From: Anolis carolinensis
Taxonomy: Eukaryota
Length of the DNA stretch: 64,000 nt
NCBI RefSeq assembly: GCF_035594765.1
Contig: NC_085841.1
Location: 318,007,402-318,071,401 of the forward strand
Direction: 5' to 3'
The position numbers were made by a program, and so were the translations under genes. Below, one piece after another: positions 9,411 through 64,000 of this stretch (position 1 is its first letter; the number at the start of each line of letters is the position of its first letter). Under the pieces are notes generated by a model. The model was not told the origin of the DNA. It did no database searches and saw only the letters and a program-made list of their open reading frames with translations.

Positions 9411-9663
9411 ATTGAATTTTTGATTTTCTTTTATTTCCCTTTATTTTCTTGATTCTTTTTATTTAGTGGGACTGGGAGTTGGGAAAGTGCGGGACGGGTG
9501 GGTGAGATGCATGCATGCGTTTGGGGACTTGGGAGAAAGAAAGAGCATCTCTTTGCTCTTGATGTACTTTTCTTTAAAAATATTTGGGTGGCTCTGAGAG
9601 TTTTGAGTGATCCTTTAGCTTCTTTTTCTCCTCTCCCCCTACTTCAGAAAATACATTTATAAG

Positions 9664-9709
<46 letters not shown>
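9664..9709. repeat. (TAA)n microsatellite, left target of the R4/Dong element
   Basis: Seen directly. Confidence 0.95.
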
Positions 9710-9712
<3 letters not shown>

Positions 9713-12700
9713 TTACCATCAGGCCACAGTACAGACAGTAGCAGACTCCAGCAACACTGGAGCAGACTGAAGAAAGTGTGGAGCTTTTGCAAGAATTTGA
9801 AGAACCAACACCTGAAGAACCAACACCTGAAGAACCAACACCATTACCAGGAATGTTGACAGCAAGACAACAAGAGCTCAAGGATAAAATCATGGCCCAT
9901 GCTGCAGCAAATGCAGTAAGAAAGAGACTCCCAACTTTAAAAACAGTGCTCAAGAGACGCCTGGCATTTCTCATGAAAGATATGAATACATTACTTTCTA
10001 CTGTCCATATAACATCCATTGAACAAACAATCTAGTTTGCCTACAGTACAGCAGTGATAGTAACAGAAGAGCTTGGACTCCTTCAACCAATGCAGCCCCA
10101 AAGAAAATCGACTGGAAAACCAAAATGGAAGATCAGGTTGGAGCTGAAAATCAAAAATCTATGATCAGATGCAAGTAACCTAGAAAATATGAAGTAGAAG
10201 AAACGGAAGAATGACAAAAGCAAGCAATACTTGATCAGAAAGTACTGGAACACCAGAAAAATTGAAGAAGCTTTGGAAATAGTGAAAGAACAAATTGCAG
10301 CAACTGCCAGAAAAATTGAAATATGAAGCCAGAATCATCCAGTACAGACAAAACCAACTGTTTCAATCAGACCAAAGACAGTTCTACCAGAGTCTGAACC
10401 AAACAACAGACACAGTAACCACAAAGCCAGAGAAAACTGCAACTACTAAGTTCTGGAAAGAACTTTGGGAAAATAATAAAAACTACAACAAAAACGCTGG
10501 GTGCATAAAGGAGTTTGAAGGAAAATTCTCACAGAACAAAATGGAACAGATGGAAATAACAACTGAAATGATCAGCAAACGAGTGCAAAAAGTCAAGAAC
10601 TGGACATTGTCTGGTAGTGATCAACTGCATGGATTTTGGCTCAAATATCTGATTAGTTTACATGGAAAAATGGCCCAACAATTCAATGAGATGCTGCAAA
10701 AAGGAAGTATCAGTGAATGGTTAACAACTAGAAGAACATACCTAATGCAAAAGAATCCAGCAAAAGGAGCAGCACCAGGAAACTATAGGCCAATAACGTG
10801 TCTACCCACTATGTTTAAACTACTGACTGGCATCATAGCTGACAGAATTCAAGACTATCTTGAAGAAAAGAGCATCTTGCTAGATGAACAGAAAGGCAAC
10901 AAACGGAAAAGCAGGGGCACAAAAGACCAGTTATTAATTGACAAAATGATTCTGGAGAACTGTAAAATCCAAAAAGCTAATCTTCACATGACGTGGATTG
11001 ACTACAAAAAGGCCCTTGACTCACTCCCACACAGCTGGATCATCAAGTGCCTGGACGCCATCGGGATTTGTAAAAATGTTGGCACTTTTTATTGAAAATA
11101 TGATGGAGCGCTGGAAAACTGAACTATTTGTTGGAAACGAAAGCTACGGACTTGTCAACATCAGAAGAGGAATTTTCCAGGGATACTCACTATCCCCACT
11201 GCTTTTCATTATTGCCACGATCTCTCTGTGAACAATCTTACAAAAAACAGACCTCGGCTATCAAGCCTCCAAGAAATCTCACAAAATTTCACATCTGATG
11301 TACATGGATGACCTGAAGCTGTATGGGAAAACTGAAACTGAAATTGAGTCTCTGACCAACACTGTCCGAATCTTTAGCGCTGATATCAACATGGAGTTTG
11401 GTCTGGAAAAATGTTCGACAGTGGCATTGAAGAAGGGAAAAATCATTGAAAGTGAGGACATAAATATGCCTAATGACCAAATGATAAAGTGTCACTAGCC
11501 AGAGGCCTATAAATATCTGAGTATACTACAGCTGGACAACATCAAGCATGAACATGTAAAACTATGGTCAGCAAAGAATACACTAAAGGGGTCAGAAAAA
11601 TTCTCAAAAGCAAGCTCAATGGAGGCAACACCATCAAGGCCATAAACACCTGGGCCATACTTGTCATAAGATATACTGCTGGCATCATAAGATATAAGAT
11701 ATACTGCTGGCAACCCAAATTGAACTGGAAATTTGGACAGAAAAACAAGAAAATTCATGACCATTCATAATTCATTTCATCCTCACAGTGATGTTGACTG
11801 GCTATATCTGCCTGGAAGATCTGGTGGCAGAGGACTCTTACAAGTAAAACAAACAGCTAAAGAAGAAGAACATGCTCTGGCAGAGTATGTAAAGGAAAGT
11901 GAAGAACCTGCTTTGATTGAAGTCAAAAATCAGAAAATCCTCAAAGCACAGCAGACAAAGAATCAGTACAAAAAAAACGCACTACAAACTAGAGCTAACA
12001 GCTGGCACGACAAAACATTGCATGTGCAGTTCTTTGACAAAATTGAAGGAAAAGCTGATAAGAAGCAGACCTGGCTATGGCTCACGAATGGGACACTGAA
12101 GAAGGAGACAGAAGGTCTGATTCTTGCAGCCCAGGAGCAAGCCATCAGAACAAATGCAATTAAGGCCAAGATCGAAAAATCATCTAATGACCCAAAATTC
12201 AGACTATGCAAGGAAGCTGACAAAACTTTGATCATATCCTCAGCTGCTGTAAGAAGATCGCACAGACCGACTACAAACAAAGGCACAATTATGTGGCCCA
12301 AATGATCCATTGGAATCTATGTCACAAGTACCACCTGCCAGCAGTAAAGAACTGGTGGGAACACAAACCTGCAAAGGTAGTGGAAAATGAGCATGCAAAA
12401 ATACTGTGGGACTTTCGAATCCAGACTGACAAGGTTTTGGAACAAAACACACCAGACCTCACGGTTGTGGAAAATAAAAAATTTGGATTATTGATGTCAC
12501 CGTACCAGGTGATAGTTGGATTGATGAAAAAAAAAAAAAAACCAGGAAAAACTCAGCCATTATCAGGACCTCAAGATCGAACTGCAAAGGCTCTGGCATA
12601 AACCAGTGCAGGTGGTCCCTGTGGTGATCGGCACATTGGGTGCCATGCCAAAAGAGCCGGCATTTGGAAACAATAAACATTGACAAAATTATGATCTGTC

Positions 12701-23671: not shown

Positions 23672-24911
23672 TAAGATAAATCATAATAATCACAGCCTAA
23701 GTTTCCCTTTTTAAAATATATTTCCCACATGAAGGAAGTAATAATAAGCTACGTAACAGGACTGTTGTCAGAGCCTTTTCAAGATGCTTTGCTGCCTCAG
23801 CAGAAGGACAGGATGGCACCCCACTTCAATCTACAAACAAAAGTAGAGTGAAGTAATAGTTTAATTTTATCTCAACATTTCTATCAAGTCTTTTAAGTCC
23901 TCCCACATACTCAAAGTACAGAAGTTCTTCTTGATGTTGTTATTTATAATTAGCATTAGCATCATCCTTATCTTCATCTTTTTCTCCAATAATGGGACTC
24001 AAAACAATGTATAAAAATTTGAGCCAATAAGATAAAAGAATATTAAAAGACTTAAAAATAAAAGGATATTAAAAGAACATGCAAAAAGTTGTTAAACTTT
24101 ATTCATTAAATTATTCACAAAATTAAAATCTTTTAAACACATCTATGAAAACTAGATAAAAGTCATCAAGGCAGCACACCATTAAAAGCTTTTGCAGTCT
24201 GGTCCCAAAAGCCTGTTGGGATGAATCAGTTTATACTTGAAAACATGAAAGGGGACATCCTAGCCTTTCTGGCCACCCTGAAGATCTTAGGCCTTTCATT
24301 TTATTTACTGAATTTATATCCTGCCGTTCCTCCAAGATAGGATTCAAGGTAGAACATATAAAAACAGTGCCTTGAATAACCAGGACCTGAACTGTATAAT
24401 GCTTTATTGATCATAACCAGCACTTTGTAACACAAGCACCTTTTAAAGAGATGGTCTTGGTGAACTGATCAGAAGGAATAGCTAGAAGAAGCTATCTTGG
24501 TGCATCAACATACTTGCCTCACCTCTACTTAGTGGTGAGGCCACTTCTGAATGATGGAATGATGTAGACATTTATTAAGCACTTTCAACATCGAAAACTT
24601 GCAATTCAAAGTTGAAGTGCTGCAGTCATTGAGAATTACATGGTCTCACAAAAAAGTTTCTTCTTCCTCTACTCCCCACACTTGAGCAAATTTGAAGCTG
24701 CAAGCAGGAGGGGAAATCTATTCCAACAGTAACTGTCATTTGTTCTTGTTGTATAGCTTCAAATCAACTCTTTACTTATTTCAACATTATCCTAGGACTT
24801 TCTTGACAAGATTTATTCCCCTTCAACTAAGGACATTATCACATCAACCTTAGTCTTGTGGCAAGTGCATTGTTTAAGCAAAATTAAATACTCTATTTAC
24901 TTGAATCTAGT

Positions 24912-25253
24912 GTGACATCAAATCTACCTATTGTGGCTCAGCCTGCTCTTCAGCCTGAGATGGAGTTCAAATCAGATTTCAGGCCCATCCAAGATTTTGA
25001 CCGAAGCCCTGTAAATTTGCAGGTGTCTGAAGTAGTTGTTACAGAGGATCCGGTAATTGAGGAACAATCCAATGGTCAGTCAAGGCTGATTCAGCCAGAT
25101 GGGGCTGTCAGCTTGGAGGAGTGTGTTGATTTTGACCGAAGAGGGATGTTTACGAGAGAGAGGAGCAGAAGGGAGGGTTTGAGAAGAAGTCAGTGTTTGG
25201 CTCTCAGACGCACTAATGAGGAACTTTTACATGAGAAGACTAGCACTCCCTAG
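24912..25253 (+). CDS. Putative LTR U3-encoded peptide (113 codons; acidic body, C-terminal FDRR..F...LRRSQ[C/R]LA)
   Basis: Open from the LTR edge. Motif spacing is identical to ORFs 38547-38822 and 60104-60397. The Cys codon TGT is one CpG transition from Arg CGT. Confidence 0.45.
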   Translation: MTSNLPIVAQPALQPEMEFKSDFRPIQDFDRSPVNLQVSEVVVTEDPVIEEQSNGQSRLIQPDGAVSLEECVDFDRRGMFTRERSRREGLRRSQCLALRRTNEELLHEKTSTP

Positions 25254-25537
25254 TTCTCATTGCACTGTAGCCTTGAAATCTCTTTAAAGATGCCTTGCTC
25301 CGTTTTTCCTGTGCAGTGTCAACTTTGCTATCCATCAGTTTTATACCTTGCTGCAATTGTACTATGCTGGCACTTTGAATTCCCACAGTTAATCTTCTAC
25401 ACAACCTCCCTTCCTAGCCATATTTGCCCTACCTACCATATGTGGGGAATAACCAGTGATATTGGATACAGTGAAAGAGTTATCCATCAATAAAAGGATT
25501 CAATCATTATTCAAGCAATATAACTATGGGACAGACA
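24913..25537 (+). mobile_element. Solo LTR (Gypsy-type), older; carries a U3 ORF
   Basis: TG...CA ends (TGACATC...GGGACAGACA), imperfect TSD TAGTG/CAGTG, AATAAA at about 25489. The left end could instead be 24911. Confidence 0.65.
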
Positions 25538-27009
25538 CAGTGTTGTGTGATAAGCCCCGATCAAGGACCCTTTTATCCAGGCCTTGTGTGATAAAGCCTA
25601 AGATGGTATGACTTACTCAAGGTTACTCAGTCATTGAGAAATTTAAATATTAGCTTCCGAAGCCCAAGTCCAATGTTCAAACCTCTATATCATGTTGGTT
25701 CCTCATGACCATTTGACTGGATAGTTGTATCTTTAGCCTTGGGTATTCTCTGTACTTACACATGACAAATGAGTATGTGTTTCTCTGTGGCCTTTTCAAT
25801 TTCCACTGCCTTCTGAACTTTCAGCACTTCTCTCATTCTAGTTTTTATACCTTAGATGCACAGGTAAGATGTTCCTTTCAGATTATGCATGAAATAACAA
25901 ACGTTACAATAGATCAAGTAATTTGGTCAGGAAACCTTCCAACTCTCTGAAAGTGTGAAAACTTTTGGTGATCCTATTTCCTTTTATAGCTCTCTAAAAT
26001 GTCATTCAGATGCTGTTCACTGTTTCACCAGGCATTTATCCTTTCATTCTTTCTGTTAACTGAGAACCAGATAGCTTTTAAACTCAAGAAATCATAAGCT
26101 TAGCCTCTGGTTAAATGTTGAATTTTGAAAGATGTTGAAAAGGCAACTCCATGGAAGAGTTTTACTAATATTAATAATGCTATTAAACAAACTTTGATGT
26201 GCTTCACCCCTGTCTATATTCTCTGTTTTGAAAACTTCTCTTAGTTCCCATTACTCAGCATGGAACCACTTTACTCACGCAAGCATCACAGTAAAATTAG
26301 TTGCTTCAACTGTAAAATGATATTGCAGGAAAAACAAAGGTCAGTCACAGCTTTGAAGTTTGTTGTTCAGTGTGTTGAAAGTTTTTAAGTGCATGTAGTA
26401 TTTTCAGGTTTTTGGAAAACATCTGTGGACAGATTTTCTAACGTGGTCTTTATCACTAAGCCAAATATTTAATGAGTATATTTATCTGATGATATTTTTA
26501 AAGAAAAGCATTTTAAAGCTTTTTGGACAGTTGACAGATATTTTCCTCTCTGATATAACCACATTTCACATATTATAAATGCATTTGCAGATAGTTGGGC
26601 GTGGACAGCATGAGATGAACCTCTTTTGGGTTTCAAGAATTAAGTTAGCTTCTCTTGGAATAAAATGTGGACCAACCAAGTTAAGGATGAAAACCATATG
26701 CGATTTCAGGTGTGGCTGAAAGCAAGAACTACTGATGAAGTTTTATGTAAAGAGATAAAAATCTGTATATGGGCTGTCAGAAACAGTTTGGCTGAACAAA
26801 GTCACTGTTCCTAAAACACTGCCGATATTCGTAAATGAGAATTGAATGAGAAACACCTGGGAAGGACCTTAATATGAGCATGCTGGTGTTCTTTGCAAGG
26901 CACAAGAGGGACCACATTAAAAGTATGTAAATTGGGTAACTCCAAGTAGATCATGAAATGTCAGAACATTTTGAAGACAATGAGTGCTTTTCTATCTAAA
27001 GAGTGAGGA

Positions 27010-36657: not shown

Positions 36658-38500
36658 TTTATTTATTTATTTCTATGCTGCTTTTCTTCAGGATGGACCC
36701 AAGGTGGCTCACATCATATTAAAAATAAACATACCAATAATTAAAATCATAACTAAACAAATATTAGAGGTTCAATAATCCTTAAAAACTTTCCGTATCA
36801 TTAAACATTAAAAGTTAAAATCAGTCTAAAATCCTCCCTGAAATCAGCTCCAGTAAGTAACCTGGCTGTTATTCTCTGGACAAATTGAAGTTTTCGAATA
36901 CTTTTCAAGGGCAGTCCCACGTAGAGCTCATTACAGTAGTCCAAATGGGATGTAACCAGTGCATGTACCATAGTGGACAAGTCAGATTTCTCCAGGAACC
37001 GGCATAGTTGGCGCACATGTTTTAGTTGTGCAAAGGCAAATCTGGGCTTCCAGATTTGAGGCGGAATCCAGAATCACCCCAAACTGCGAACCTGAGATTT
37101 CAAAGGGAGTGTAACCCCCAACCAGCTCAAGTTGTAACCCTATTCCCGGATCGATTTTACACAAGACAAGCAGTATCTCTGTTTTATCTAGATGTTTATC
37201 CTCATCCAGTCCATTACTGACCTCAGGCAGCGGTTCAGGTGTGGGACAGCTTCCTTAGCATCCGATGGAAAGGAGTAGTAGAGCTGAGCATCATCCGCAT
37301 GCAGATGATACCGAACTTCAAAACTCTGGATGATCTCTCCCAGCAGTTTCATGTTGTTGTTAAGTAACATTGAGGATAGGGATGAGCTTCTTTTAATGCC
37401 ATGGGGACCCTGCTTTGGTGGAGTGAGGCATTAATCAGCTCCCTTATCCAGGTTGTTTTAACAGCCAAGAGGGACAAGGGTCAAGAATGCAGGTGGTGGC
37501 TCTGTCTTCTCCCAAGATGTATTGCTATCCTCGGATAAAACCAATTGGAATGAATCCATAAATATCGGATAAGACGGTGCCATGGCTACTTCCACCGGAG
37601 CTCTATTAATAATGAATCTATTCTGATCTTAGTGGCAAAAGACAGGCATCATGAATCTAGGCTGATCTTGATGGCAAAAGGCAGGCAAAATCCTCACAAT
37701 GGGCAGTGGTATAGAACAGATGGCCCTCTACTTTGGGGTTTAAGAACCCTTTAACCACTCTGAACAGCTCTGAGGACCTATCTTTAGCAGCCACAATAGA
37801 CATGGTTTTCGTTGCTGCCTCAGTAGCCCTGCTGTATGCCTTCTGGTGGTGCCTAGTCTTTTGGTAATCGGATTCACTTTGGTTCTTTCATCACTCACAC
37901 TCTAGTCTCTTTCCTGTCTGCCTCATTCCTAATATCTACTTGGAAAACCAAGGGGCCAGTTTAGCTCCACATCTGGGAAGGGGATGTTTTGGAGTGATCA
38001 CATTAACAGTCCTGGCCGCTTCCGTATTCCAGAGATCAATCAGAGCATCAATAGAATCACCTACCCTGGTAACTGGGAAGTCCCCAAAAGAACTCCAGGA
38101 ATCAATCTGGATCCATAATATATAAATAAAACTTTATTTATATTCTGCCCTATCTCCCCGAGGGGACTCCTTAATGGGTCTGCAACTTTCGTGGAGGGAA
38201 GGGGTCCCAGGGGGTCTAAACCTGACCAAGAAATGATGTAACCATGACAAAGGGACTCCTGAAAGTTCCTTCACCATCAGATTCTGACTACCTTCGCTCT
38301 CCGTGACAAACACCAGATCAAGATGGTGTCCAGCCTTATGAGTGGGATGAGCTGTCACTTGAAACAGCTGCACCTAAAAAGGTAGATTCAGCATAGATAT
38401 TGAAGTCTCCTGGCACAAAACGTCTGGGAGAGTCCCAGACCAGGCCTGAAATCAACCCTGTCAGCTCAATTAGGGAGGTTGTTGGGCAACAAGATGGCCG
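36658..38500 (-). mobile_element. L2 LINE, internally deleted and degenerate
   Basis: Minus ORFs: PTHKAGHHLDLVF (endonuclease end, 38134-38373), YHLHADDAQLYYSF (RT, 37188-37370) and VHALVTSHLDYCN..YVGLPLK (36801-37016). (TAAA)n tail at 36658-36672. A second short L2 tail is inserted at about 38132-38170. Confidence 0.88.
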
Positions 38501-38545
38501 GATATAAGGACAAATGATCCCAGAAAGAGGAGTATCTTAACCCTG

Positions 38546-39424
38546 TGTGATGCCCCATGGGCCTTGGAGTCCTGACCCCAGTGCCATCATGGATCATGAT
38601 GATGAAAACATGGGATTTTTGCCGTCTCAACAAGAGACCGTGCCATTCCAGATGCCTGTTGTGGACAATTCTTGCCAAGAACTCATTAAAACAGACCTTG
38701 AACAAGTTCTTCCCAGCGCTTCTCCCCCCTTCGTGAGACGGGAGTTTTTTGAGGCGAGCTGTTTCCAGAGAGCGCAAACAAGGAGAAGCGTGAGATTAGC
38801 AGCAAGACAGGGTGCTAATTAGCTAGTTTCCCCTGGGAGCTTTCAGGGAGGAACGCATCTGGATGAAGATGTGTTTCGCTTCTTTTTCCCTTGGGAAAAG
38901 AAGCTCTGGACACCTGTTTGCAGGAAGATTCGAAGTTCCTTAAAAGCTTTTCGCACGGGCAAATCTGAGCGGAGTCAACGTGTCAGTTGAAGGATTAACT
39001 TCGGTTCTAGTTAAGTGTGGACTGCGTTTTGAGTCCGCTATCTCTAGTCTCTCCGTGCCTTGCCTTGCCGTGTACTTGACCGGTCACCGTGTTCCCAGCC
39101 TTGCATCTTGTGCCAAGTACCCAGTCTTGTCTTCAGTTCCTGCCTTGGACTTACTTTGAACTCTAGAAAAACTTTGGACGCTTTCCCCACTCTAACTGCT
39201 TGGAAGTAGAGTGTGTTTCGGTTTTGGGATTATAACTTTGAACTCTAATATTATATACTGGACAATATATTTCTGGACTATATTTGACCTTCCCTGAAAG
39301 GTCTACTGCTGGACTACATTCTCTACTTGTTTTTATCCTATTATAATATTTCCTTAATAAAGATATTAGATTGTTATTGGCCTCCGTGTGTTGGTTCTTA
39401 GTGCTCCGCTGCCAGGGCGTGACA
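38546..39424 (+). mobile_element. Solo LTR (Gypsy-type, 879 bp), related to 60103-61078
   Basis: TGTGA...TGACA ends. Perfect 5-bp TSD CCCTG at 38541-38545 and 39425-39429. AATAAA at about 39356. 3' third clearly similar to 60860-61078. Confidence 0.93.
38547..38822 (+). CDS. Putative LTR U3-encoded peptide (91 aa; ends RRSVRLAARQGAN*)
   Basis: Intact frame from LTR base 2. Aligns at protein level with 60104-60397 at both ends. Confidence 0.55.
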   Translation: MMPHGPWSPDPSAIMDHDDENMGFLPSQQETVPFQMPVVDNSCQELIKTDLEQVLPSASPPFVRREFFEASCFQRAQTRRSVRLAARQGAN

Positions 39425-42164
39425 CCCTGGTGCTTTTAATCCAGTTCTTAATGAAGGATATAAGGACAAACGATGCCTACAATGACGGGATTGAAAATGG
39501 ATTTCTGTCCTTCCGTATTCGGGAGGCTCCTGAAAAATGGATCAGGCCCCCACTGAAATCCAGGACACCAAAACAGATCATGGTTTACCTGAATTGCAGA
39601 AACCTAATGGTAATGCCCAGAATGTCATTAATTATATTCTTTAACATTATAACTGTATGTTGGCTGAGCACTGGTTATTAAAAGCAGAAGTAAAGACAAC
39701 AATTTCAATCTTAACAATAGTAATAACTGTACTTTTTAAAAAATCCACAAAATTATTATCCTTATTTTCATGCTTTATGGTTTGAGTAGAGCTCTGGACA
39801 GGACAGAGACATGAAATGCCTTTGGATCCGGTTCAAGCAGAGCCAGCTGACTAATTGCCTCTTCTGTTTGGAGATAATCGGTTGCTTATAAAACATTATC
39901 CTTCTGCAAGCTTACCTTATTATTAATGTAATGTTTTATGAGTAGAGTCAACTGCAAGGAAACAAGAGAAATATCCACCCTGGGGTGTTTTAAAGCTGGA
40001 GGGGAAATGAACACACACAGGCACACAAACGCACACACCATGGGATTTTATCAAGGCATTGCAGCTTTGACCTGTATTATTTGTTTCTATTTTTAAAGAT
40101 CCAAATATCATCCTGGATAAAAGTCAGCAGAGACATGAATATGTCTGCAGGATGTCTGCTATGATTAATCTTAATTCACAATGAAGATGTTGAATAAAAC
40201 AATGTGTATTATAATATATGCCTTATTAAAAGAAAATGCTAAATATTAAAACTGCATCCTGAGGGTTTTTTTTTTTAAAAAAAATCCTGGCCACAGAAGT
40301 ATGTTCTGTCCCTGCTTTAGCACTTTCTAAAACCAAAAGCCAGTGCATTTTATTTTGATTGTAGATATGGTTTCTCTCACTCTCCCTCCTTTCTGCCTCT
40401 GTGTGATAGTTTGCCATACAAAAAAGATATAGCTCAATAAAATGAAAGATCCACTGTACTGTATTATTGGCCTGAAGGAATTCTTCATCAGGTTAATGGA
40501 TCTGATGGTTTCCTCTTCACTGGTTTTCAGGATGATTATATTTTATTTATAGGAAGAAAATAATAGTTAATCATAAATATATTGAAAATGTGTTGTAATA
40601 CTGCGTACATTGGTAATAATAACACAGGTATGGAAACAATTTTCTCTTTGGTTTTGTTTCCCTAAGTGCTGATGTTTTGCAAATCCATTGACTTGAAATT
40701 AAATAGCCTCCTGTATCAGCAGCGAAAGAGTTACATTCCATCTATTGCTCTATCTGTATTGCTTTGCTGATCAGAGAGATTTCATTACACAGAATACTTT
40801 TTACACCTGAGGTGCTTCTTTTTGAAATAGCAAAATAGTGAACAAAATAGCCGAGAGCTGAAATCTCGTGGATAGCAAACAAGTTGTCCTCTGGAGGCTA
40901 TAAGATCTGATTTCCAAGTCAGCTGAGTCATTTGCCAGATGAAAAGCCTACTGGTCAACCATAATTGTGTCCAGAGGTTTGAATCTTAAACCATTATATG
41001 TGGCTTGCAAATTTATACTGGAAATATGAGAAACAGCATGAACAGAAGCATGTTGTAAAGCAAAACCACAGTACCTAGAGAATTGGATAATTTATTGCAG
41101 GCTTAAAAAAAAACTTTAAACTCTTACCTGTGTCTTTTATGTGCAAATTTAAATGGATCTGGGAATAGTTTTGTATTTGATGCAAGCTTATACATGTTAA
41201 CAAAACAAGTGGTGTAATTTTAAACTGTAAGATCCTCAGTGAAGGAGGGAAGGCAGCAGTATTGTATTTGCAACAATGCTGAATTATAGCATTCCACTCA
41301 TCTTACTGTAGTTTACTGAGTTGGGTGGCTGAAGGTGGGGAGGTGCTGAATCAAAGTTAGTCCTCAGGCAACCAGAAATGCTTGTTACATGGGTCCCTAA
41401 TGGGTGGCAAAAGATCGACTGTGGCATTGCATTTCACCAAAAAATAAAAGAGAGACTTCTCTGCAGTTCCATTAGTCATAATGATTGAAATCCACTGCAT
41501 CACTGTGGGGTAGAACAGCAGACAGACCATTTTGGGAGTGAATCGCAGATTCTACACAGATTTTTTTCAGGGGAAGAAAAGGCGAGAGACAAGAAGATAG
41601 CAATTACTGTTGAATTTTTCATGCTTACAATGTGTTATTATCTCAACCCAGCACTCCCTCTAATGGCTATGTATGGCCTTTGACTGGACACCTACATTAA
41701 TTTTAGAGCTCTTCTATTGTTTTGCTTGCAGCAAAATTTGACATAAATGCAATGTTTCACCTCAGGTTGAACTTGGTGGGGAAACAACATGAAAGTCAAT
41801 TAAAATCTCAACTCACTTCCCACTATTTTTTCAATAACATTTTTTTATCATCCATTATTATTATTTCACACCAAAAGGTGTTTGAAAGACCTTTGGGTCG
41901 GTGCTACCAAAAGAAAAGACTGTCTGCCACACTTTCTTTTGCTGAGATACATCAGAAGCAACATTTTAAATAATACCTATGAAAATAATGTAGAACATGA
42001 GATATCGGGTAAAATGATAATGATAACGTCTTCTAAGTTCTAATGCAATAGGGCTCCAGTTCAAATCCCGTTCATAAATATGGATTCTCTTTGGTATTGT
42101 GGCTCAGTCTATGCTTTCAAATGAAGAAAAACAACATTAGATTATTTTAAAGAACTGTTTTTAT

Positions 42165-55926: not shown

Positions 55927-56252
55927 TGTCAGGACCCATGTTTCCCGGGCCTTCACGTTGGCGCCGGGAATCAGGCCCCTGACATTCCCGCGCATTCCTG
56001 AACTGATAAGCAGGCCGGGGCCGGCCTTGAGACATCAACGGACAAAGGGGGTTTTTGGCGGGCACTGTGCGCGGGTTTTTTCACTGAGCGGGAATTGCTT
56101 GTTTGAATGTGGGAGGAGGCTATATAAAGGGACCCGAGGGCATCACCCAGCACTCTTGGCTTCTTATGCGTCAGTTATCCTTCAGTAAACATTCATCTTG
56201 TTTACGTGCCGGTCTCGCGTCTTCATTCCCGAGCGGCTGGAGTGAGCTGACA
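55927..56252 (+). repeat. 5' LTR
   Basis: TGTCA...TGACA. TATATAAA at 56121, AGTAAA at about 56184. Three substitutions relative to the 3' LTR. Confidence 0.98.
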
Positions 56253-56255
56253 GGC

Positions 56256-56266
56256 AAGCCAAGAGT
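56256..56266 (+). promoter_or_regulatory. Self-priming primer-binding site
   Basis: AAGCCAAGAGT is the exact reverse complement of ACTCTTGGCTT (56152-56162), which lies 31 nt after the TATA start. There is no TGG tRNA-type PBS. Confidence 0.8.
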
Positions 56267-56295
56267 ACTGACGCCATCCTGTGTTACAGTGAGGT

Positions 56296-56790
56296 ATGGA
56301 AATGGACGAAGAGGCAGAAACTTTGATCGGAGCAGAGGGGGGCATGTCCCTCTCCGACCAGTTCGAGGGGTTTGCAGCCGTGGCGGCTTCCACCGCATAT
56401 GCGCACCCTAACGGAGTCACTCGTAGACGAGAGAGGGCGCGAAGGGACGACGCGGAGCCCAAGTAGCGATTTGAGCTTCGTGTCCCCACAAAGACTAGAG
56501 TTCCTGGAGGAGAGAATGGGTGCCCTCGAAAGCACGCTTGACGTCATGTCAAAAGCGATGGAGCGCCTCGCTCCTCTCCTCGCGGCAAGCTGGGAGGGAA
56601 TGGCCCGGGCCGAACCCAGGCAGACGACGGGCGAGGAATGGACCCAGGGGGCCCCGAAAGACATGGGGGCCCGCGCCAAATCCCAAACGGGCCTCGCGAG
56701 GACGGAGGGGGGCGACAATGGCAGTAGCGAGGACAAAAGAAGACCCCAGAGAGAGCCGTTGGATTTTCTCCCCCCCCGGTGCCCCCGGCA
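56296..56790 (+). pseudogene. gag: gag N-terminal region with two apparent frameshifts
   Basis: ATG 56296 (MEMDEEAETL...) stops at 56464. The coiled-coil-like RLEFLEERMGALESTLDVMSKAMERL lies in the next frame (56372-56920). The frame returns to that of 56779 near the C-run at about 56770-56777. Confidence 0.6.
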
Positions 56791-59700
56791 CACGCCGGGC
56801 GCGGCGCTAGCCATCGAGGGGAAGCGACGGGACATCATCACCGAGCCCCAGGGGACATGCAACGCACCGGGCCGTGGGGACCGCCTGCCCCATTCCCACA
56901 GCAGAGGAGGGAGGAGTTGAGAATCGAGTACGAGGGGGAACCCTCTGAGCTAGACTTTTTCATGACCACCGTCAGAGGCTTCATGGAGGACAACGGACAG
57001 ACTTTTGCGTCCGAAGCCAGTCGGGTTAGGGCTATAGGAGCCGCCTTGAGGAAGGCAGCTGCGGGTTGGTATGTGCAACTACATGCCAGGCGCGACCCCT
57101 GCCTGAACTCTGTACGGCAGTTCCTGGCAGCCCTGGAAGGCCGTTTCCGCGATCCGCTGGAGCAACTCCGGGCGAAGGAGGGGCTGAGAACCATCCTCCA
57201 GGGGCAGAGGTCAGTCTCCCAGTACGTGGAGGAATTCCAGAGCCTAGCAGAAAAGGTTAGAGACTGGAGCGACGTGACGAAGCTGGAGTGCTTTAAGGAG
57301 GGGCTGAGACCCGAGCTCCTCTCCTGGGCGGCACACAGAGACGATCCAGGGACGCTACAAGGCTGGATTCAGCTGGCAGGGCGCGTCGAGACAACGCTAG
57401 CTCAAGTGAGGAGACAACGAGGAGGCGGAAGACCACAACGACAGCAACCCCAGCCGAGCGGGGAGATCAGGAAGCCAGGGGGACCCCCCTCCGGGAAACG
57501 ACCTGAGGGAAAAGGAAATACCAACAAGGCATGGAGCGGATGTTTCGTGTGCGGGCGTGTAGGGCACCGGGCTGCCGAATGCTGGCAGCGGAAAGGGGAA
57601 GGGGGCAACCAGCCCAAACCCAAGACTGCGGCAGGAAAGCGGGCAGAGGAGGAAACTCCGGGAGGAAGCCGACCCGATGAGCTAGTAAGTCATGACAAAA
57701 GAATGCTAGTAATGCCAATTAGAATAGAGGGGAAGGACAAACACGCCACATGTAAAGCTTTTATCGACTGCGGGTGCTCGAGGAACATCGTCACACCCGA
57801 ACTAGCAGGGGAATTGGGGTGCGAGACGGTGGCGCTCGGGACACCGCTCGCATTCTCGCAGCTCGATGGATCCCTGGCCTCAGGAGGGGTGGCCAAACAC
57901 TCCGTAGAGAAGGTCAAATGCCAGATAGGGACCTGGGGAGGAGAGGTGTCGTTTGTCATATCCCCAATGGCGACCTATAACGTAATATTAGGCATGCCAT
58001 GGTTGGAACAGGCCAATCCACTTATTGATTGGGAGGCTAGGAGCCTACTCTTCAAAAGGATAGAGAAAGAGATAAGCAACAAGGGGGAAGAAGAACTTGG
58101 CAGGTTGGAAGAACTGGCTAGGCAATTACCCGAAGAATATCGTGACTTTGTTGATGTTTTTGACGAAAAGGGAGCCGATAAATTTCCACCCAAAAGGAGA
58201 GTAGAAGTAGGGATCGAACTAGTGCCAGGGGCAGAACTCCCCAAAGCTAAAATCTACCCGATGTCTGCACAGGAAAAGGAGGAACTGAGGAAGTATATTG
58301 ACAAAAACTTGGCACGGGGTTTCATAGAACCATCGAATTCCCCCCTGGGGGCCCCAGTGTTGTTCAGGCGTAAAAAGGACAATTCGCTTAGGCTATGTAT
58401 TGACTATAGAAATCTGAACGCAATCAGCACAGATAACAAATACCCATTACCCCTAATGAAGGATTTGTTGTCCCAATTGGCAGAGGGGAAAATATTCACG
58501 AAATTAGACTTAATTGAAGCGTACCACAAATTAAGGATCAAACCAGAAGACAGGTGGAAGACTGCTTTCTCCTGTAATTATGGATTATTCAACTACCGAG
58601 TGTGCCCTTTTGGTTTAAAAAATGCAGGAAGCGTATTTATGCAGTTAATTAACGAGGTACTCCACCCGTTGTTACACAGGGGAGTCTATGTCTACCTAGA
58701 TGACATATTAATAAGAGGGGAGACCAAACAGCAGCATGTCCAATTGGTGAGGGAAGTACTCCAAAAGCTTAGGGAAGCAAAACTCTATGCCAGGATAGCC
58801 AAATGCGAATTCAACAAGGACCAAATAGACTTCCTGGGATACAGAATTTCATCCCAAGGGATAGCCATGGACCCCGCTAAGGTGGAGGATGTGAAAGGGT
58901 GGGAGGCCCCAAAAACCCGTAAACAACTACAGTCCTTCCTTGGGTTTGCGAATTTCTACCGGACGTTTGTGAAAGACTTTGCACAACTAACACTGCCACT
59001 GACAGACCTACTAAAGACAAAGGGGAGGGGGGAAACGACCAGAGTAAAGGCCCCGGGGGCTAAGCTGGCGTGGACAAGGGAATGCCAAGAGGCCTTTGAA
59101 GCCCTAAAGGGGAAATTTACAGAGGAACCGGTGTTGCAACACCCTGATATGTCCAAGCAATTTGTTGTACATTGCGATGCCTCCGATTGTGCGTATGGGG
59201 CGGTCCTGTTGCAAAGGGACCGGGAGGGTAACCTTAAACCATGCGGGTACCTGTCGCGAAAATTCAATGATGTAGAGAAGCGCTGGCCGATTTGGGAAAG
59301 GGAAGCGCTGGCCATCTTGAGAGCACTGGAATGCTGGAGACACCTCCTGGAAGGAAGCGGGACCCCTTTTGAAGTGTGGTCTGACCATAAAAATTTACAA
59401 TACCTGAGATCCCCTCGCAAACTGTCCCCCAAGCAAATGAGATGGGCCCAGTATTTCAGCAGATTCGACTTCCAACTGAAATTTTTCCAGGGGAAACATA
59501 ATGTACTGCCTGACGCGCTCTCACGCATGCCTCAGCATGAGGTGGGGCCCCAAGACTCCGAGGGAGGGATATTCTCAGACAAACAGTGGGGCCTAGCGGT
59601 CACAACCAGAGCGCAAGCCGAGAGAGAGAATAAACTCACGGCCATCAAGACGGAGGGGGAAACATGGGAGAAGGAATTAAAGCAAGCATATCAGGGGGAC

Positions 59701-60102
59701 ACCTGGTTGATTTCCAATAAGGGGAAGGGGGAACTGCATGGAGGTTTGATGTTTGTCAACAAAAAGCTGTACATTCCTGAAATATTGCGGCCAGAAATGC
59801 TGAAACGGTATCACGACAGTAAAGGGGCGGGCCACCTGGGGCTTACAAAAACCATAAAGCTATTAGCAAGGCAATGTTGGTGGCCGGGGATGAGGGGAGA
59901 TGTGAAGTCACACATCGCCAAATGTGACCTATGTGCAGAAAACAAAACAACCCCCGGGAAACCACAAGGGCTGTTACAAACCGTAGTAGAACCCACGAGG
60001 CCGTGGGAATGCATAGCGATGGATTTTGTGGGCGAACTACCCCCTAGCCGGGGGTGTCGATACATTTGGACTGTTTTGGACCTGTTTTCCAAACAGGCCC
60101 AC
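56779..60102 (+). CDS. pol: Gag-Pol polyprotein, part 1 (capsid, CCHC knuckle, protease, RT, RNase H, integrase N-terminus)
   Basis: CFVCGRVGHRAAEC, AFIDCGC, LRLCIDYRNLN, PFGL, YLDD, HCDASD, WSDHKNL, integrase H-X6-H...CDLC and AMDFV. Open for 1108 codons up to the inserted LTR. Confidence 0.95.
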
Positions 60103-61078
60103 TGTGATGACCCATGGGCCTTGTAGTCCTGCTCATGACATTGTGATGCCTGATGAAGAAGGAAACTTGGGTTTTTTACCTTCCCAGTCAGAACTGGATT
60201 CTTCCCAGACAGATTCTTCCCAGCCAGATCTGGGAACCTTGCACCTGCAAGAGGGTTATGTCCCAGAAGTATGTCAAACAAACACTGAGGCTACATCTCC
60301 TGTGTTTTCTCGCCATGAGTTTTGTAAACAACAGAGAGGTTTGGAAGCGGCCTCGCGCAGGAGTGCTAGAATAATTGCTAAGAATTTAGCCAATTAAGCC
60401 TGCTTTCCATGAGAATCTTTAAGGAGTCAAACATCTGGTCTCAGAGATTAGCTTTCGTTTCTGGTTCCCAGAGAACTGCTCTCGGCGGGAAAGTTAGACT
60501 CTATATAGGTGTTTTACCCGCGGAGTAACTTTGCGGAGTCAATTCGTCAGCCTCCGGAGCGAGTTGCGTCTGGACAGCGCGCTCCGATCCAAGCCTCGTT
60601 CCTGTTCAAGCCTTGTTCTTGTTTTCAAGCCTTCGCTCCTGTTTCCCAGCCTTGTTTACCTACGGACCTTGCCTCGCCTTTCAGGACTAAGCCTTGCCTT
60701 GTTTCACGGATTTTACCAAGTAATTCCACGGATCTTGTTCTTGTTCCTTGTTACCTTGTGCCACGATTCAAGCCTTGTTTTCAAGTATCAAGTTAATTCC
60801 TAGCCTTGCTCAAGTTCATGGACTAAAGGACCTTGTCATCTCCCCTCACTTTGCCTGGCAAAGTGAGTGTTTCGGTTATTGGATTACAACTTTGGACCTT
60901 AATATTTCATATTGAACATTGTTTCTTTGGACTAATTTTGACCTTTCCTGAAAGGTCTGCTTCTGGACTAACTTTTACATTTGCTTTTATTAACTTTATA
61001 TATTTCCTTAATAAAGATATTAGATAGAATCTGGCCTCTGCGTATGGTTATTGGTGCTCTGTAGCCTGGGTCGTGACA
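60103..61078 (+). mobile_element. Solo LTR (976 bp) nested in the Gypsy integrase
   Basis: TGTGA...TGACA ends. Perfect TSD CCCAC at 60098-60102 and 61079-61083. TATATA at 60502, AATAAA at about 61010, internal AAGCCTTG-like repeats. Confidence 0.96.
60104..60397 (+). CDS. Putative LTR U3-encoded peptide (97 aa; ends RRSARIIAKNLAN*)
   Basis: Intact frame from LTR base 2. Homologous to 38547-38822, with a net in-frame 6-codon length difference. Confidence 0.55.
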   Translation: MMTHGPCSPAHDIVMPDEEGNLGFLPSQSELDSSQTDSSQPDLGTLHLQEGYVPEVCQTNTEATSPVFSRHEFCKQQRGLEAASRRSARIIAKNLAN

Positions 61079-61083
61079 CCCAC

Positions 61084-61842
61084 TTCGTGCCGCTACAGAA
61101 ACTCCCCTCGGCTGAGAAACTCGCCGAGCTGTATATTAAACACATTTATCGCCTGCACGGATGCCCCGAGAAGGTAATTAGCGATAGGGGGGTCCAGTTC
61201 ACGGCGAGGTTTTGGGGGACGTTCTTACAGATGCTGGGGGCAGAGAGGAGCCTAAGCTCAGCGTTCCACCCCATGACCAACGGGGGGGTCGAACGCACAC
61301 AGCAAACGCTGGCGCAATACCTGAGAATATATTCTAACCGTAGGCAGAACGACTGGGCTGACCTATTACCGTTCGCTGAGGCAGCCTTTAACGGGGCGAC
61401 GCACTCCGCCACAGGGAGATCCCCCTTTGAGATTGTATACGGCCAAGAAGTAGCGCCGTTCCCAAAGTTGCCCGAGTGGAAAGAAGAGGGGGAGTTCGAA
61501 GGCAGGGAATGGCGAACAAGGATCAGAGCTGGGTGGCAGGATGTGGCGGCGGCACTGAGAGAAACGCAGCGAAAGTACAAACTATTTGCTGACCGAAAGC
61601 GCAGGGAGGGGGAGACAATTGAGGAGGAAGACTTGGTCTGGCTGAGTACAAAAAACTTAAGTCTGGGGCTCCCCTCCAAAAAGTTGAGCCCGCGTTACAT
61701 AGGCCCCTTCAGAGTGTCAAGGAGAATCAACGAGGTCACCTACCAACTGAAACTACCAAGGGATCTGGGGAAGGTACACCCAGTATTCCATTGTAGCTTG
61801 CTTAAGAAATACAGGGGTACGTTGGACAACGGAGAGTCGTAG
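61084..61842 (+). CDS. pol: Pol part 2: integrase core and GPY/F domain, no chromodomain
   Basis: ISDRGVQF, HPMTNGGVER and RYIGPF. In frame with part 1 once the 981-bp insertion (LTR plus one TSD copy) is removed, joining as KQAH|FVPL. Confidence 0.95.
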   Translation, partial: FVPLQKLPSAEKLAELYIKHIYRLHGCPEKVISDRGVQFTARFWGTFLQMLGAERSLSSAFHPMTNGGVERTQQTLAQYLRIYSNRRQNDWADLLPFAEAAFNGATHSATGRSPFEIVYGQEVAPFPKLPEWKEEGEFEGREWRTRIRAGWQDVAAALRETQRKYKLFADRKRREGETIEEEDLVWLSTKNLSLGLPSKKLSPRYIGPFRVSRRINEVTYQLKLPRDLGKVHPVFHCSLLKKYRGTLDNGES

Positions 61843-61863
61843 ATGTATTGGTTGTTTCTTTTC

Positions 61864-61891
61864 AGGAGGAAGAGGAAGAAGAGGAGGAGGA
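61864..61891 (+). promoter_or_regulatory. Polypurine tract
   Basis: AGGAGGAAGAGGAAGAAGAGGAGGAGGA just before the 3' LTR. Confidence 0.9.
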
Positions 61892-61896
61892 CACCA

Positions 61897-62222
61897 TGTC
61901 AGGACCCATGTTTCCCGGGCCTTCACGTTGGCGCCGGGAATCAGGCCCCTGACATTCCCGCGCATTCCTGAACTGATAAGCAGGCCGGGGCCGGCCTTGA
62001 GACATCAACGGACAAAGGGGGTTTTTGGCGGGCACTGTGCGCGGGTTTTTTCACTGAGCGGGAATTGCTTGTTTGAATGTGGGAGGAGGGTATATAAAGG
62101 GACCCGAGGGCATCACCCAGCACTCTTGGCTTCTTATGCATCAGTTATCCTTCAGTAAACGTTCATCTTGTTTACGTGCCGGTCTCGCGTCTTCATTCCC
62201 GAGCGGCTGGAGTGAGCTGACA
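61897..62222 (+). repeat. 3' LTR
   Basis: 323/326 identical to the 5' LTR. Confidence 0.98.
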
Positions 62223-63245: not shown

Positions 63246-63505
63246 GCCCAGAAGGGTGAAAACCTTCAAACATCTCCATAACTTTGCTGGTAATTCCTGC
63301 ATGTATTCAGTTAAAGGAAACTAAATGAATATAGTAAGGACATTTAAAAAGACTTTGGGAGATTACTGTAACTCAGCAACAAAGCACATTCATTACATTG
63401 AAACAGACCCAGGTTCTGTCCTTAGCATCTACAGTTAAACTGGGAAAAGCTCCCCCCTCTCTCTATCTTTCTCAGAAAAATCCATCCTGTGGCTTATCGT
63501 GTACT

Positions 63506-63669
63506 NNNNNNNNNNNNNNNNNNNNNNNNNNNNNNNNNNNNNNNNNNNNNNNNNNNNNNNNNNNNNNNNNNNNNNNNNNNNNNNNNNNNNNNNNNNNNNN
63601 NNNNNNNNNNNNNNNNNNNNNNNNNNNNNNNNNNNNNNNNNNNNNNNNNNNNNNNNNNNNNNNNNNNNN
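63506..63669. other. Assembly gap (N run)
   Basis: Seen directly. Confidence 1.
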
Positions 63670-64000
63670 CTAAAAATCTTGGGTTTTACAGTTGACTGCA
63701 ATTTTGATGCCATTCGTTCCATTTAATACATTTGAAAATACCATACCTCCAATTAGAAAATGTATAGGATGGAAATATTACTTCATTTACAAATATTACT
63801 AACAAAATTTATTTCAAATCAAGATATTTATGTTTCTACAATATAAATATGGTGAAGGTAGGCAATTATAAAAATTTCTACAAATGTTAATAACTGCTTT
63901 TTATTTAAATGATACTGAGATGATGCTATTAATAAATCCTTATCTGTTTTCCTGATTTATTAAGAGGGCAAATCTTTTCCTGTTCAGGTTAATTTTACAA

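What the first reader, a model, noticed from the sequence alone, without database searches (positions are those of the whole stretch)
38546..38822. Conserved peptide encoded in the U3 of related solo LTRs, ending in a nucleosome arginine-anchor-like RRSxRL motif
Seen in the sequence: the solo LTRs at 38546 and 60103 both start an open frame at LTR base 2 (t|GTG ATG). Their N-termini align (VMPHGPWSPDPSAIMDHDDENMGFLPSQQE vs VMTHGPCSPAHDIVMPDEEGNLGFLPSQSE). The acidic middles are unalignable and differ by an in-frame 6 codons. The C-termini align without gaps to the same stop (SPPFVRREFF...RRSVRLAARQGAN* vs SPVFSRHEFC...RRSARIIAKNLAN*). Keeping frame and motif across such divergence suggests selection on protein. 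The ORF lies upstream of the LTR TATA, so it could only be expressed from the 3' LTR copy, either as read-through of the integrase C-terminus across the PPT or from a spliced RNA. Established knowledge: RRSARL is the core of the HMGN nucleosome-binding domain that contacts the H2A-H2B acidic patch; U3-encoded ORFs exist in MMTV (sag) and HIV (nef overlap); the plant CRM integrase tail extends into the 3' LTR. Inference: a reptile Gypsy lineage may encode a chromatin-tethering (or NLS) module inside its LTR, so each solo LTR deposits a copy.
Basis: partly seen in the sequence, partly recalled or inferred. Interest (0 to 1): 0.85.

Follow-up and report, generated by a model that had tools for sequence, protein, structure and literature searches.

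The report
Integrase tail encoded in lizard LTRs
The open frames at the start of these lizard solo LTRs are dead copies of the last ~90 codons of a chromodomain-retrotransposon integrase that reads past the polypurine tract into its own LTR; that tail ends in the same RRSxR peptide that HMGN, Dsup and yeast Dot5 use to grip nucleosomes, so it may tether integration to chromatin, but binding has not been tested.

Summary
Window 38546-39424 and 60103-61078 are true solo LTRs (TG..CA ends, 5-bp target duplications). Each carries an open frame from LTR base 2 (91 and 97 codons) that ends at the same aligned stop. A third, dissimilar LTR (24911-) does the same.

The frame is not a separate gene. 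Anolis carolinensis gene models (5 protein clusters, at least 64 member sequences) show an integrase (zinc finger, core, SH3) and a chromodomain. These are followed by a purine-rich linker ...GDS and then VMTHGPCSP..., the same peptide, running to the same stop. LTR B's peptide is 80% identical to one such tail.

A rattlesnake relative shows the same layout in DNA: the integrase frame runs 328 nt into the 3' LTR in the same phase.

Selection on the protein is supported. pN/pS is 0.58 (CI 0.44-0.77), against about 1.1-1.2 in shifted frames. Ten of the 13 best-supported differences to other genomic copies are synonymous.

The tail is acidic, then basic, ending in RRS[AVL]R[IL]AA[KR]. That matches HMGN RRSARLSA and Dot5 RRSARIAT. 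Nucleosome binding is inferred, not shown.

The plant CRM group A layout is the precedent. No paper held in the searched library links an HMGN-like motif to an integrase. This scan has already reported the same family on other DNA of this genome.

The parts
38541..38545 (.). Target-site duplication of LTR A (CCCTG); second copy at 39425-39429
   Evidence: Read directly
38546..39424 (+). Solo LTR A (879 bp, TGTGATG...GTGACA); TATA-like TTAAAAG at 38940-46; AATAAA at 39356-61
   Evidence: 51-74% identical to LTR B along its length
38547..38822 (+). Relic of the integrase tail coding region (91 codons + stop), frame from LTR base 2
   Evidence: 54% aa identity to P0009:524-610, the end of an integrase-chromodomain protein
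38598..38630 (+). Conserved acidic block DDENMGFLPSQ
   Evidence: N, G, F, P and Q are invariant across subfamilies
38781..38804 (+). HMGN-like motif RRSVRLAA (followed by RQGAN and the stop)
   Evidence: R, S, R and A are invariant in alignment A4
60098..60102 (.). Target-site duplication of LTR B (CCCAC); second copy at 61079-61083
60103..61078 (+). Solo LTR B (976 bp) inserted in the integrase gene of a young non-chromo Gypsy; TATATA at 60502-07; AATAAA at 61010-15
60104..60397 (+). Relic of the integrase tail coding region (97 codons + stop)
   Evidence: 80% aa identity to P0013:421-517 (E = 8e-50), the tail of an integrase-chromodomain protein
60155..60187 (+). Conserved acidic block EEGNLGFLPSQ
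60356..60379 (+). HMGN-like motif RRSARIIA (followed by KNLAN and the stop)
24911..25835 (+). Third, dissimilar LTR C (starts TGTGACA; the 3' end and TSD (A/T)TCTAG are uncertain)
24912..25253 (+). ORF from LTR base 2 (113 codons), no ATG near the start, same F-x16-RRS spacing. The motif RRSQCLAL at 25182-25205 has Cys (TGT) where the anchor Arg would be
   Evidence: only a weak match to the anole tails (E about 0.07)
55927..62222 (+). Host element of LTR B: a Gypsy without a chromodomain, 326-bp LTRs with 3 differences, TSD TCCTTG. Its integrase ORF stops at 61842, before its own PPT and 3' LTR (61897), which gives the contrast case

Best explanation
Shown: the ORFs at the 5' end of solo LTRs A and B (and probably C) are inert copies of the last ~90 codons of the pol/integrase gene of Anolis chromoviruses (Ty3/Gypsy elements with a chromodomain). 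In the full element the integrase frame does not stop after the chromodomain. It runs through a short basic linker and the polypurine tract (...ERGLEEGDS) and enters U3 of the 3' LTR at base 2. It ends about 280 nt inside the LTR, upstream of the LTR promoter. Because U3 is copied to both LTRs at reverse transcription, every LTR, solo LTRs included, carries the coding sequence. Only the 3' copy is part of a translated frame. The tail is under purifying selection in the lineage of active elements. It has conserved islands (HGPxSP, the acidic (D/E)EEN(L/M)GFxPxQ block, SPxFxR, and RRSxR[IL]AA[KR] five residues from the end) separated by a fast-evolving, indel-rich acidic spacer. Inferred, at about 40% odds: the terminal RRSxR[IL] peptide acts as an HMGN/Dsup/Dot5-type arginine anchor on the H2A-H2B acidic patch. 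Together with the chromodomain it would give the integrase a two-point hold on nucleosomes that helps target or stabilise integration. The confidence figure below refers to the shown part.
For: - Solo LTR anatomy.
- Same frame, phase and stop in three LTRs.
- Anolis carolinensis proteins P0005, P0006 and P0008-P0013 (clusters of 4, 1, 33, 9 and 17 members) hold Integrase_H2C2, rve, SH3_Tf2-1 and Chromo domains. These are followed by the tail to the same C-terminus.
- LTR B's tail is 80% identical to P0013:421-517, and LTR A's is 54% identical to P0009:524-610.
- DNA-level proof of the layout in a squamate relative (Crotalus L001): LTRs start at 5118 and 10050, and a contiguous integrase-chromodomain gene (9001-10377) runs 328 nt into the 3' LTR. 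The junction RDS|VV is in the same phase as the anole GDS|VM.
- Selection.
- Motif: consensus RRS[ALV]R[IL]AA[KR], against HMGN RRSARLSA, Dsup RRSSRLTS and Dot5 RRSARIAT. In those proteins R1, R2 and R5 are required and contact the acidic patch (PMC12487698; bioRxiv 10.64898/2026.01.14.699602).
- Background: RRS.R[LIVM] occurs 0 times in 69,087 non-tail residues of 125 chromoviral proteins.
Against: - No Anolis DNA of a full-length copy could be fetched. The anole junction therefore rests on automated gene models.
- No evidence of transcription or of the protein. The 'RNA?' runs were contigs indistinguishable from a DNA run.
- The motif is only 8-9 residues. Pfam finds no HMG14_17 match, PDB phmmer finds nothing and the Atlas finds nothing.
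- AF2 (low confidence, mean pLDDT 52) draws the last 27 residues as a helix, whereas HMGN and Dsup bind in an extended form.
- Some copies carry RRNLR, RQSLR or RRSLS. Snake tails carry ARRRRQxxR instead. RRSxR is not significantly enriched in tails outside Anolis (4 seen against 1.7 expected, p about 0.09).
- A basic C-terminus could equally be an NLS or a nucleic-acid contact.
Confidence: 0.85

Rival explanations
1. The tail is real integrase sequence, but its basic end serves another purpose. It could be a nuclear localisation signal, a contact with DNA or RNA, or a docking site for a host protein other than the nucleosome. In that case the likeness to HMGN is coincidental.
For: Integrase C-termini of Ty1 and Ty3 carry NLSs (established knowledge). 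The motif is short. AF2 predicts a helix at pLDDT about 74 for the last 27 residues. Snake and fish relatives have different basic tails. RRSxR is not enriched outside Anolis.
Against: The conserved residues are exactly R1, R2, S3, R5 and the [IL] at position 6, the ones that matter in HMGN, Dsup and Dot5. They are not a K/R cluster of NLS type. The match to Dot5 RRSARIA is 7 of 7 in P0006, P0013 and P0001 (bioRxiv 10.64898/2026.01.14.699602). Synonymous codon turnover at these residues shows selection on the peptide.
Confidence: 0.35
2. The frame is an independent U3-encoded accessory gene (of sag/nef type) that starts at the ATG at LTR bases 5-7. It would be expressed from a spliced or LTR-internal RNA, perhaps even from solo LTRs.
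For: The ATG at bases 5-7 is present in A, B and all anole tails ('VM'). Gene models P0001, P0002 and P0007 begin in or splice from such LTRs.
Against: LTR C and the Crotalus element have no ATG there, yet they keep the frame from base 2. The frame is continuous with integrase in five protein clusters (at least 64 member sequences). The ORF lies upstream of the LTR's own TATA. P0001, P0002 and P0003 are chimeras with unrelated host or LINE sequence. No RNA evidence was obtained.
Confidence: 0.05
3. The conservation reflects DNA-level constraint on the LTR end (integrase att site, enhancers) or chance, not a protein.
For: The first ~28 nt are nearly identical between A and B, as expected for an att end. 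Long stop-free runs of 71-101 codons also occur elsewhere in these LTRs. DNA identity of the ORF part (51%) is no higher than that of other LTR parts.
Against: Differences concentrate at third positions and are synonymous. Shifted frames show pN/pS of about 1.1-1.2 and many stops. All indels are in frame. The same peptide ends annotated integrases.
Confidence: 0.03

Closest known systems
Plant CRM group A chromoviruses (centromeric retrotransposons), Neumann et al. 2011, PMC3059260
   Same: [quoted passage not shown] The LTRs begin TGATG-like.
   Different: CRM group A has lost the canonical chromodomain and the CR motif is unrelated in sequence. The anole elements keep a canonical chromodomain and add an acidic-basic tail of about 108 aa ending in RRSxR[IL]. 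The host is a vertebrate.
HMGN nucleosome-binding core and HMGN-like motifs of tardigrade Dsup and yeast Dot5
   Same: The peptide R-R-S-x-R-[LI]-x-x is shared: HMGN RRSARLSA, Dsup RRSSRLTS, Dot5 RRSARIAT, and here RRSARIAA / RRSARIIA / RRSVRLAA. It sits in a disordered region near a protein terminus, as in Dot5.
   Different: There is no homology outside the motif (Pfam HMG14_17 not matched), so this is mimicry or convergence at most. Binding is untested. It sits at the end of a retrotransposon integrase.
Retroviral and retrotransposon integration tethers: MLV integrase C-terminal tail to BET ET domain, Ty5 integrase targeting domain to Sir4, chromodomains of Tf1/MAGGY-type chromoviruses, PFV Gag CBS and KSHV LANA on the acidic patch
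   Same: A short linear peptide at or near the integrase C-terminus (or on Gag/LANA) docks the element to a chromatin component. LANA and PFV Gag use an arginine anchor on H2A-H2B.
   Different: No integrase is known, in the library searched, to carry an HMGN-type acidic-patch motif. Here it would act beside a chromodomain.
U3-overlapping ORFs of retroviruses (MMTV sag, HIV nef)
   Same: Coding sequence lies inside U3, so LTRs carry it.
   Different: Those are separate genes with their own start and mRNA. Here the frame is the continuation of pol.

Membership tests
Solo LTR of an LTR retrotransposon | TG..CA termini and a short target-site duplication, with no internal region | tested here: met
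   A: TG..CA, TSD CCCTG. B: TG..CA, TSD CCCAC, and it splits a host integrase codon run exactly. C: the 5' end is clear; the 3' end and TSD are uncertain.
Solo LTR of an LTR retrotransposon | U3-R-U5 signals (TATA-like box, polyadenylation signal near the 3' end) | tested here: met
   TATA-like box at 38940-46 and 60502-07; AATAAA at 39356-61 and 61010-15, in aligned columns. This is sequence reading only.
Chromovirus (Ty3/Gypsy with chromodomain integrase) as parent | Integrase with H2C2 zinc finger, rve core, SH3/GPY-F domain and a C-terminal chromodomain, physically joined to this tail | tested here: met
   Pfam hits on P0005 and P0006. The tail follows the chromodomain in P0005, P0006 and P0008-P0013. 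LTR B is 80% identical to the tail of P0013. The join is seen in gene models, not in anole DNA.
LTR-encoded integrase tail (CRM group A-type layout) | The pol frame continues through the PPT into the 3' LTR | tested here: met
   DNA level in Crotalus L001: the gene at 9001-10377 is contiguous, the 3' LTR starts at 10050 and the phase is the same. Protein level in Anolis. Full-length anole DNA could not be fetched.
HMGN-like nucleosome acidic-patch motif | Arginines at motif positions 1, 2 and 5 (essential in HMGN2, Dsup and Dot5) | tested here: met
   A has RRSVR and B has RRSAR. These positions are conserved across subfamilies with synonymous codon turnover. LTR C has RRSQC, so position 5 is lost in that old copy. 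Some decayed copies have RRNLR, RQSLR or RRSLS.
HMGN-like nucleosome acidic-patch motif | Ser at position 3 and Leu/Ile at position 6 | tested here: met
   S and L/I are present in A, B and C and in most anole tails.
HMGN-like nucleosome acidic-patch motif | Acidic-patch-dependent binding to nucleosomes | not testable with these tools
PMC12487698 reports that AlphaFold 3 gives only low-confidence, wrongly oriented models even for HMGN2.
HMGN protein family (Pfam HMG14_17) | Profile match over the HMGN domain | tested here: not met
   No Pfam hit at E <= 10 for six tails. No PDB sequence hit.
LEDGF/HRP2 TND-interacting motif (helix, acidic linker, FxGF) | Two phenylalanines in F-x-G-F after an acidic linker (PMC9987994) | tested here: not met
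   The conserved block is (D/E)EEN[LM]GF. The first Phe position is Asn in all anole tails of this family.
Separate U3 accessory gene (sag/nef type) | Own initiation codon and an mRNA independent of pol | tested here: inconclusive
   An ATG at LTR bases 5-7 is present in A and B but absent in C and in the Crotalus element. The frame is continuous with integrase. No usable RNA data were obtained.

The most novel reading that the evidence does not exclude
Anole chromoviruses carry, at the extreme C-terminus of integrase and encoded inside their own LTR, a working mimic of the HMGN/Dsup/Dot5 arginine-anchor peptide. The integrase would then hold the nucleosome at two points: the chromodomain on a methylated H3 tail and RRSxR on the H2A-H2B acidic patch. 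This would be the first integrase known to dock directly on the acidic patch. It would also be an example of LTR U3 serving as a fast-evolving cassette for swapping chromatin-targeting peptides between retrotransposon lineages. Other tails in this genome and in fish and snakes carry different basic motifs.
Probability: 0.35. Interest if true: 0.8.

Novelty: new variant of a known kind. Interest (0 to 1): 0.6.

Why it matters
How LTR retrotransposons and retroviruses choose integration sites is known for only a handful of tethers (LEDGF, BET, Sir4, TFIIIB/AC40, chromodomain-H3K9me). An integrase tail ending in an HMGN-type acidic-patch peptide would add a new class of tether. It would also enlarge the recently opened set of HMGN-like nucleosome binders (Dsup, Dot5). 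It is directly testable with a 30-residue peptide.

The finding also has a practical side for annotation. Conserved 'micro-ORFs' at the start of vertebrate chromovirus LTRs are integrase ends, not new genes. They do get pulled into automated gene models (P0001, P0002, P0003, P0007). Repeat libraries that split elements into an internal part and an LTR cut the integrase short.

Tried and rejected
- **Pfam on six tails and on fish and snake tails:** no family match.
- **PDB sequence search:** nothing.
- **ESM Atlas feature search:** best score 0.76, which is in the noise range.
- **The look-up of encoding contigs:** P0005 and P0006 are not on record. For P0018 and P0001 the gene range was too long to return DNA. 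The anole junction was therefore not seen in DNA.
- **The look-up of sequencing runs and read laying:** only Logan contigs were available. The runs guessed as RNA look like the DNA run, and no loose end upstream of 38546 was listed. Nothing can be said about expression or splicing. The call was still useful for variant letters.
- **AF2 of P0013:330-517 on a 7-row alignment:** mean pLDDT 52. The tail middle is below 45 and the last 27 residues form a helix at about 74. This model is too weak to use, and no fold search was run on it.
- **Enrichment of RRSxR in chromoviral tails outside Anolis:** 4 seen against 1.7 expected, p about 0.09, not significant.
- **ORF length as evidence:** rejected, because the rest of the LTRs also has 71-101-codon stop-free runs.
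- **FxGF/LEDGF reading for the acidic block:** rejected for this family, because Asn stands in place of the first Phe.
- **Modelling on H2A-H2B:** not run.

Full report
**1. What is in the window**

Window 38546-39424 (LTR A, 879 bp) and 60103-61078 (LTR B, 976 bp) both begin TGTGATG and end GTGACA. Each is flanked by a perfect 5-bp duplication: CCCTG for A and CCCAC for B.

LTR B sits inside the integrase gene of another element, a Gypsy without a chromodomain (55927-62222). That element's 326-bp LTRs differ at 3 positions. Its integrase reading frame is split exactly at the insertion...DLFSKQAH | LTR B | FVPL.... B is therefore a very recent insertion that has already collapsed to a solo LTR.

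A and B align along their whole length. Identity is 50-58% over most of it and 74% over the last ~230 nt. The TATA-like boxes and AATAAA signals fall in aligned columns.

**2.

From LTR base 2, A is open for 91 codons and B for 97. The first 30 codons align without gaps. So do the last ~34, which run to the same stop. The acidic middle differs by in-frame indels.

A third LTR starts at 24911 (TGTGACA). It is unrelated in most of its sequence. Even so, it is open from base 2 for 113 codons and shows the same F-x16-RRS spacing.

ORF length alone is not remarkable, because the pyrimidine-rich remainder of these LTRs has stop-free runs of 71-101 codons. The codon pattern is what carries the argument:
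- Over all 87 aligned codons of A against B, pS is 0.72 and pN is 0.41. The ratio is 0.58, with a bootstrap 95% interval of 0.44-0.77 and no replicate at or above 1. Synonymous sites are saturated, so the true ratio is lower.
- The two shifted frames give ratios of 1.06-1.24 and are full of stops.
- In GFLPSQ, five of six codons differ only at synonymous third positions.
- In the RRSxR motif the codons are AGG AGA AGC ... AGA in A and CGC AGG AGT ... AGA in B.
- Independent support comes from public contigs of the same organism. Of the 13 best-supported letters at which other genomic copies differ from LTR A inside the ORF, 10 are synonymous and 10 lie at third positions. My binomial estimate for 10 or more synonymous out of 13, taking about 28% synonymous by chance, is roughly 3e-4.

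**3. What it is**

A profile of the two peptides was searched against 1.84 billion representative proteins. It returned only chimeric gene models ending in the same peptide.

Searching with one of those tails while allowing longer proteins found Anolis carolinensis 'Gypsy retrotransposon integrase-like' proteins. P0005, P0006 and P0008-P0013 belong to clusters of 4, 1, 33, 9 and 17 member sequences. They contain, in order:
- Integrase_H2C2, rve, SH3_Tf2-1 and Chromo domains;
- the linker ...YPAKPRPRxSxRxxxxERGLEEGDS;
- then VMTHGPCSP... through to ...RRSxRIAAKxxA(D/N) at the C-terminus.

LTR B's peptide is 80% identical (E = 8e-50) to residues 421-517 of P0013. LTR A's is 54% identical to the tail of P0009. 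The parents are therefore chromoviruses whose integrase frame continues for about 108 residues beyond the chromodomain. The last ~87-97 of those residues are encoded by U3.

I could not fetch anole DNA for these models. I tested the layout in DNA in the closest relative that had a retrievable locus, Crotalus adamanteus L001. There, 604-bp LTRs (95-97% identical) start at 5118 and 10050. The intronless gene at 9001-10377 encodes rve-SH3-chromo. It crosses into the 3' LTR at ...RDS|VVIQ..., in the same phase as the anole GDS|VM (LTR base 1 is the third base of the Ser codon). It then runs 328 nt into the LTR. In that element the 5' LTR copy of the frame is broken by a 1-nt insertion.

By contrast, the non-chromo Gypsy that hosts LTR B stops its integrase frame at 61842, before its own PPT.

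Fish chromoviral proteins in the same search also extend past a GGG(T/S)VT stretch by about 18 residues, ending in ...SPEY. By analogy that stretch looks PPT-encoded, but this was not checked in DNA. If so, reading into U3 would be widespread in vertebrate chromoviruses, and only the length and content of the tail would vary.

**4. Anatomy of the tail**

Across subfamilies the chromodomain is about 95% conserved, while the tail is 40-80% conserved. The first two thirds of the tail are acidic with no basic residues. The last third is basic.

The conserved islands are:
- HGPxSP. This overlaps the LTR terminus, so a DNA-level att constraint cannot be separated from protein constraint here.
- (D/E)EEN(L/M)GFxPxQxE.
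- SPxFxR.
- RRS[ALV]R[IL]AA[KR], followed by 4-5 residues and the stop.

AF2 on a shallow alignment gave a poor model. The middle of the tail is below pLDDT 45, which is compatible with disorder. The last 27 residues form a helix at about pLDDT 74. I do not lean on this model.

**5. How it most likely works**

The shown part is the layout and the selection. The inferred part is the function.

The terminal motif matches the HMGN core RRSARLSA. It matches even more closely the yeast Dot5 motif RRSARIAT, where P0006, P0013 and P0001 read RRSARIAAK. Cryo-EM shows that HMGN2 R23 and R26, and Dsup R363 and R367, sit in the H2A-H2B acidic patch (PMC12487698). In Dot5, R6, R7 and R10 are required for nucleosome binding (bioRxiv 10.64898/2026.01.14.699602).

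The residues kept in the tails are those same positions, R1, R2, S3, R5 and [LI]6, and they show synonymous codon turnover. In 69,087 non-tail residues of the 125 chromoviral proteins whose chromodomain could be located (of 128 held), RRS.R[LIVM] never occurs.

I therefore put about 40% on an acidic-patch tether acting beside the chromodomain. I put about 35% on another role for the basic end, such as an NLS, a nucleic-acid contact or a different partner.

Points against the tether reading:
- The motif is short.
- There is no family-level similarity to HMGN.
- Snake tails carry ARRRRQxxR instead.
- RRSxR is not significantly enriched outside Anolis.
- LTR C has Cys (TGT) at the anchor position. 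That fits CpG decay of CGT in an old copy, but this is inference.

The acidic EENxGF block lacks the first Phe of the FxGF motif that LEDGF/HRP2 partners require (PMC9987994). I therefore do not file it as a TND-interacting motif.

**6. Comparison with what is known, and novelty**

The layout has a published precedent in plants. [quoted passage not shown]

I found no paper in the searched library that combines 'HMGN-like' with integrase. Among the papers on acidic patch, retrotransposon, integrase and chromodomain, none describes such a tail. I rate the finding as a new variant of a known kind.

This scan has already reported the same family on other DNA of this genome. Three follow-up reports reached the same reading (s1-519628, s1-519684, s1-539920). 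I reached it from my own searches before reading them.

- the DNA-level rattlesnake element with the conserved junction phase;
- the contrast with the host Gypsy in this window;
- the synonymous bias of variant letters in public contigs;
- the survey of tails across vertebrate chromoviruses.

**7. Limits**

There is no anole full-length DNA, no RNA or protein evidence and no binding test. No modelling on histones was possible, because no histone sequence was available by reference. PMC12487698 also reports that AlphaFold 3 fails on HMGN2-nucleosome complexes.

Noticed in passing
window 55927-62222: A nearly intact Gypsy without a chromodomain. It has 326-bp LTRs (55927-56252 and 61897-62222) with 3 differences, TSD TCCTTG and PPT-like purines at 61851-61896. 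The gag-pol frame is open from 56779 to the LTR B insertion and resumes at 61084-61842. The only visible damage is the solo LTR B in its integrase.
   Followed up: partly
P0001, P0002, P0003, P0007 (Anolis carolinensis gene models): Solo or 5' LTR copies of the tail ORF are pulled into automated gene models. P0001 makes it the last part of 'LOC107983085 isoform X2'. P0002 uses it as a first exon fused to a C19orf12-like protein. P0003 places it at the end of a LINE reverse transcriptase. P0007 splices it as an N-terminus (MPPVMTHGPCSP...ENMG) to gag. These are likely annotation artefacts or exonisations.
   Followed up: partly
P0039, P0043, P0062, P0066, P0071, P0107, P0126 and others (fish chromoviral proteins): The fish linker after the chromodomain reads PAPRGRGRPPRRRGRPSG...GGGTVT and is followed by about 18 residues ending in SPEY/F. 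The RGRP repeats look like AT-hook cores (HMGA type) by eye. Pfam gave no hit at E <= 10.
   Followed up: partly
L001:5118-5721 versus L001:10050-10652 (Crotalus adamanteus): In this element the 3' LTR copy of the tail frame is intact (109 codons). The 5' LTR copy is frameshifted by a 1-nt insertion after 47 codons. The snake tail is acidic and then ends in ARRRRQLARVRQQRSMKHLQSKKKRQGETLP, with no RRSxR.
   Followed up: yes
window 38441-38545 and 39425-39615: The flanks of LTR A are themselves repeated in the genome. Contig depth runs from tens to tens of thousands, and many 'goes back' or 'skips' joints were reported. A unit GGATATAAGGACAAA(T/C)GAT occurs on both sides of the LTR. LINE-like ORF fragments lie at 36801-37370 and 38134-38373 on the minus strand.
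   Followed up: no
window 39193-39380 and 60862-61043: The R-end/U5-proximal ~190 nt of the LTRs (around TTCCTTAATAAAGATATTAGAT) is far more conserved (74-76% between A and B) than the rest. It is also far more abundant in public contigs, with depth 10-100 times that of the rest of the LTR. This suggests it is shared by many LTR families.
   Followed up: no
window 38760 and 25194-25196: LTR A has TGT (Cys72) where other copies have CGT (Arg). LTR C has TGT at the position of the motif's fifth residue (Arg in the other families). Both fit CpG decay after insertion.
   Followed up: partly
window 63500-63670: A run of N (assembly gap or mask).
   Followed up: no
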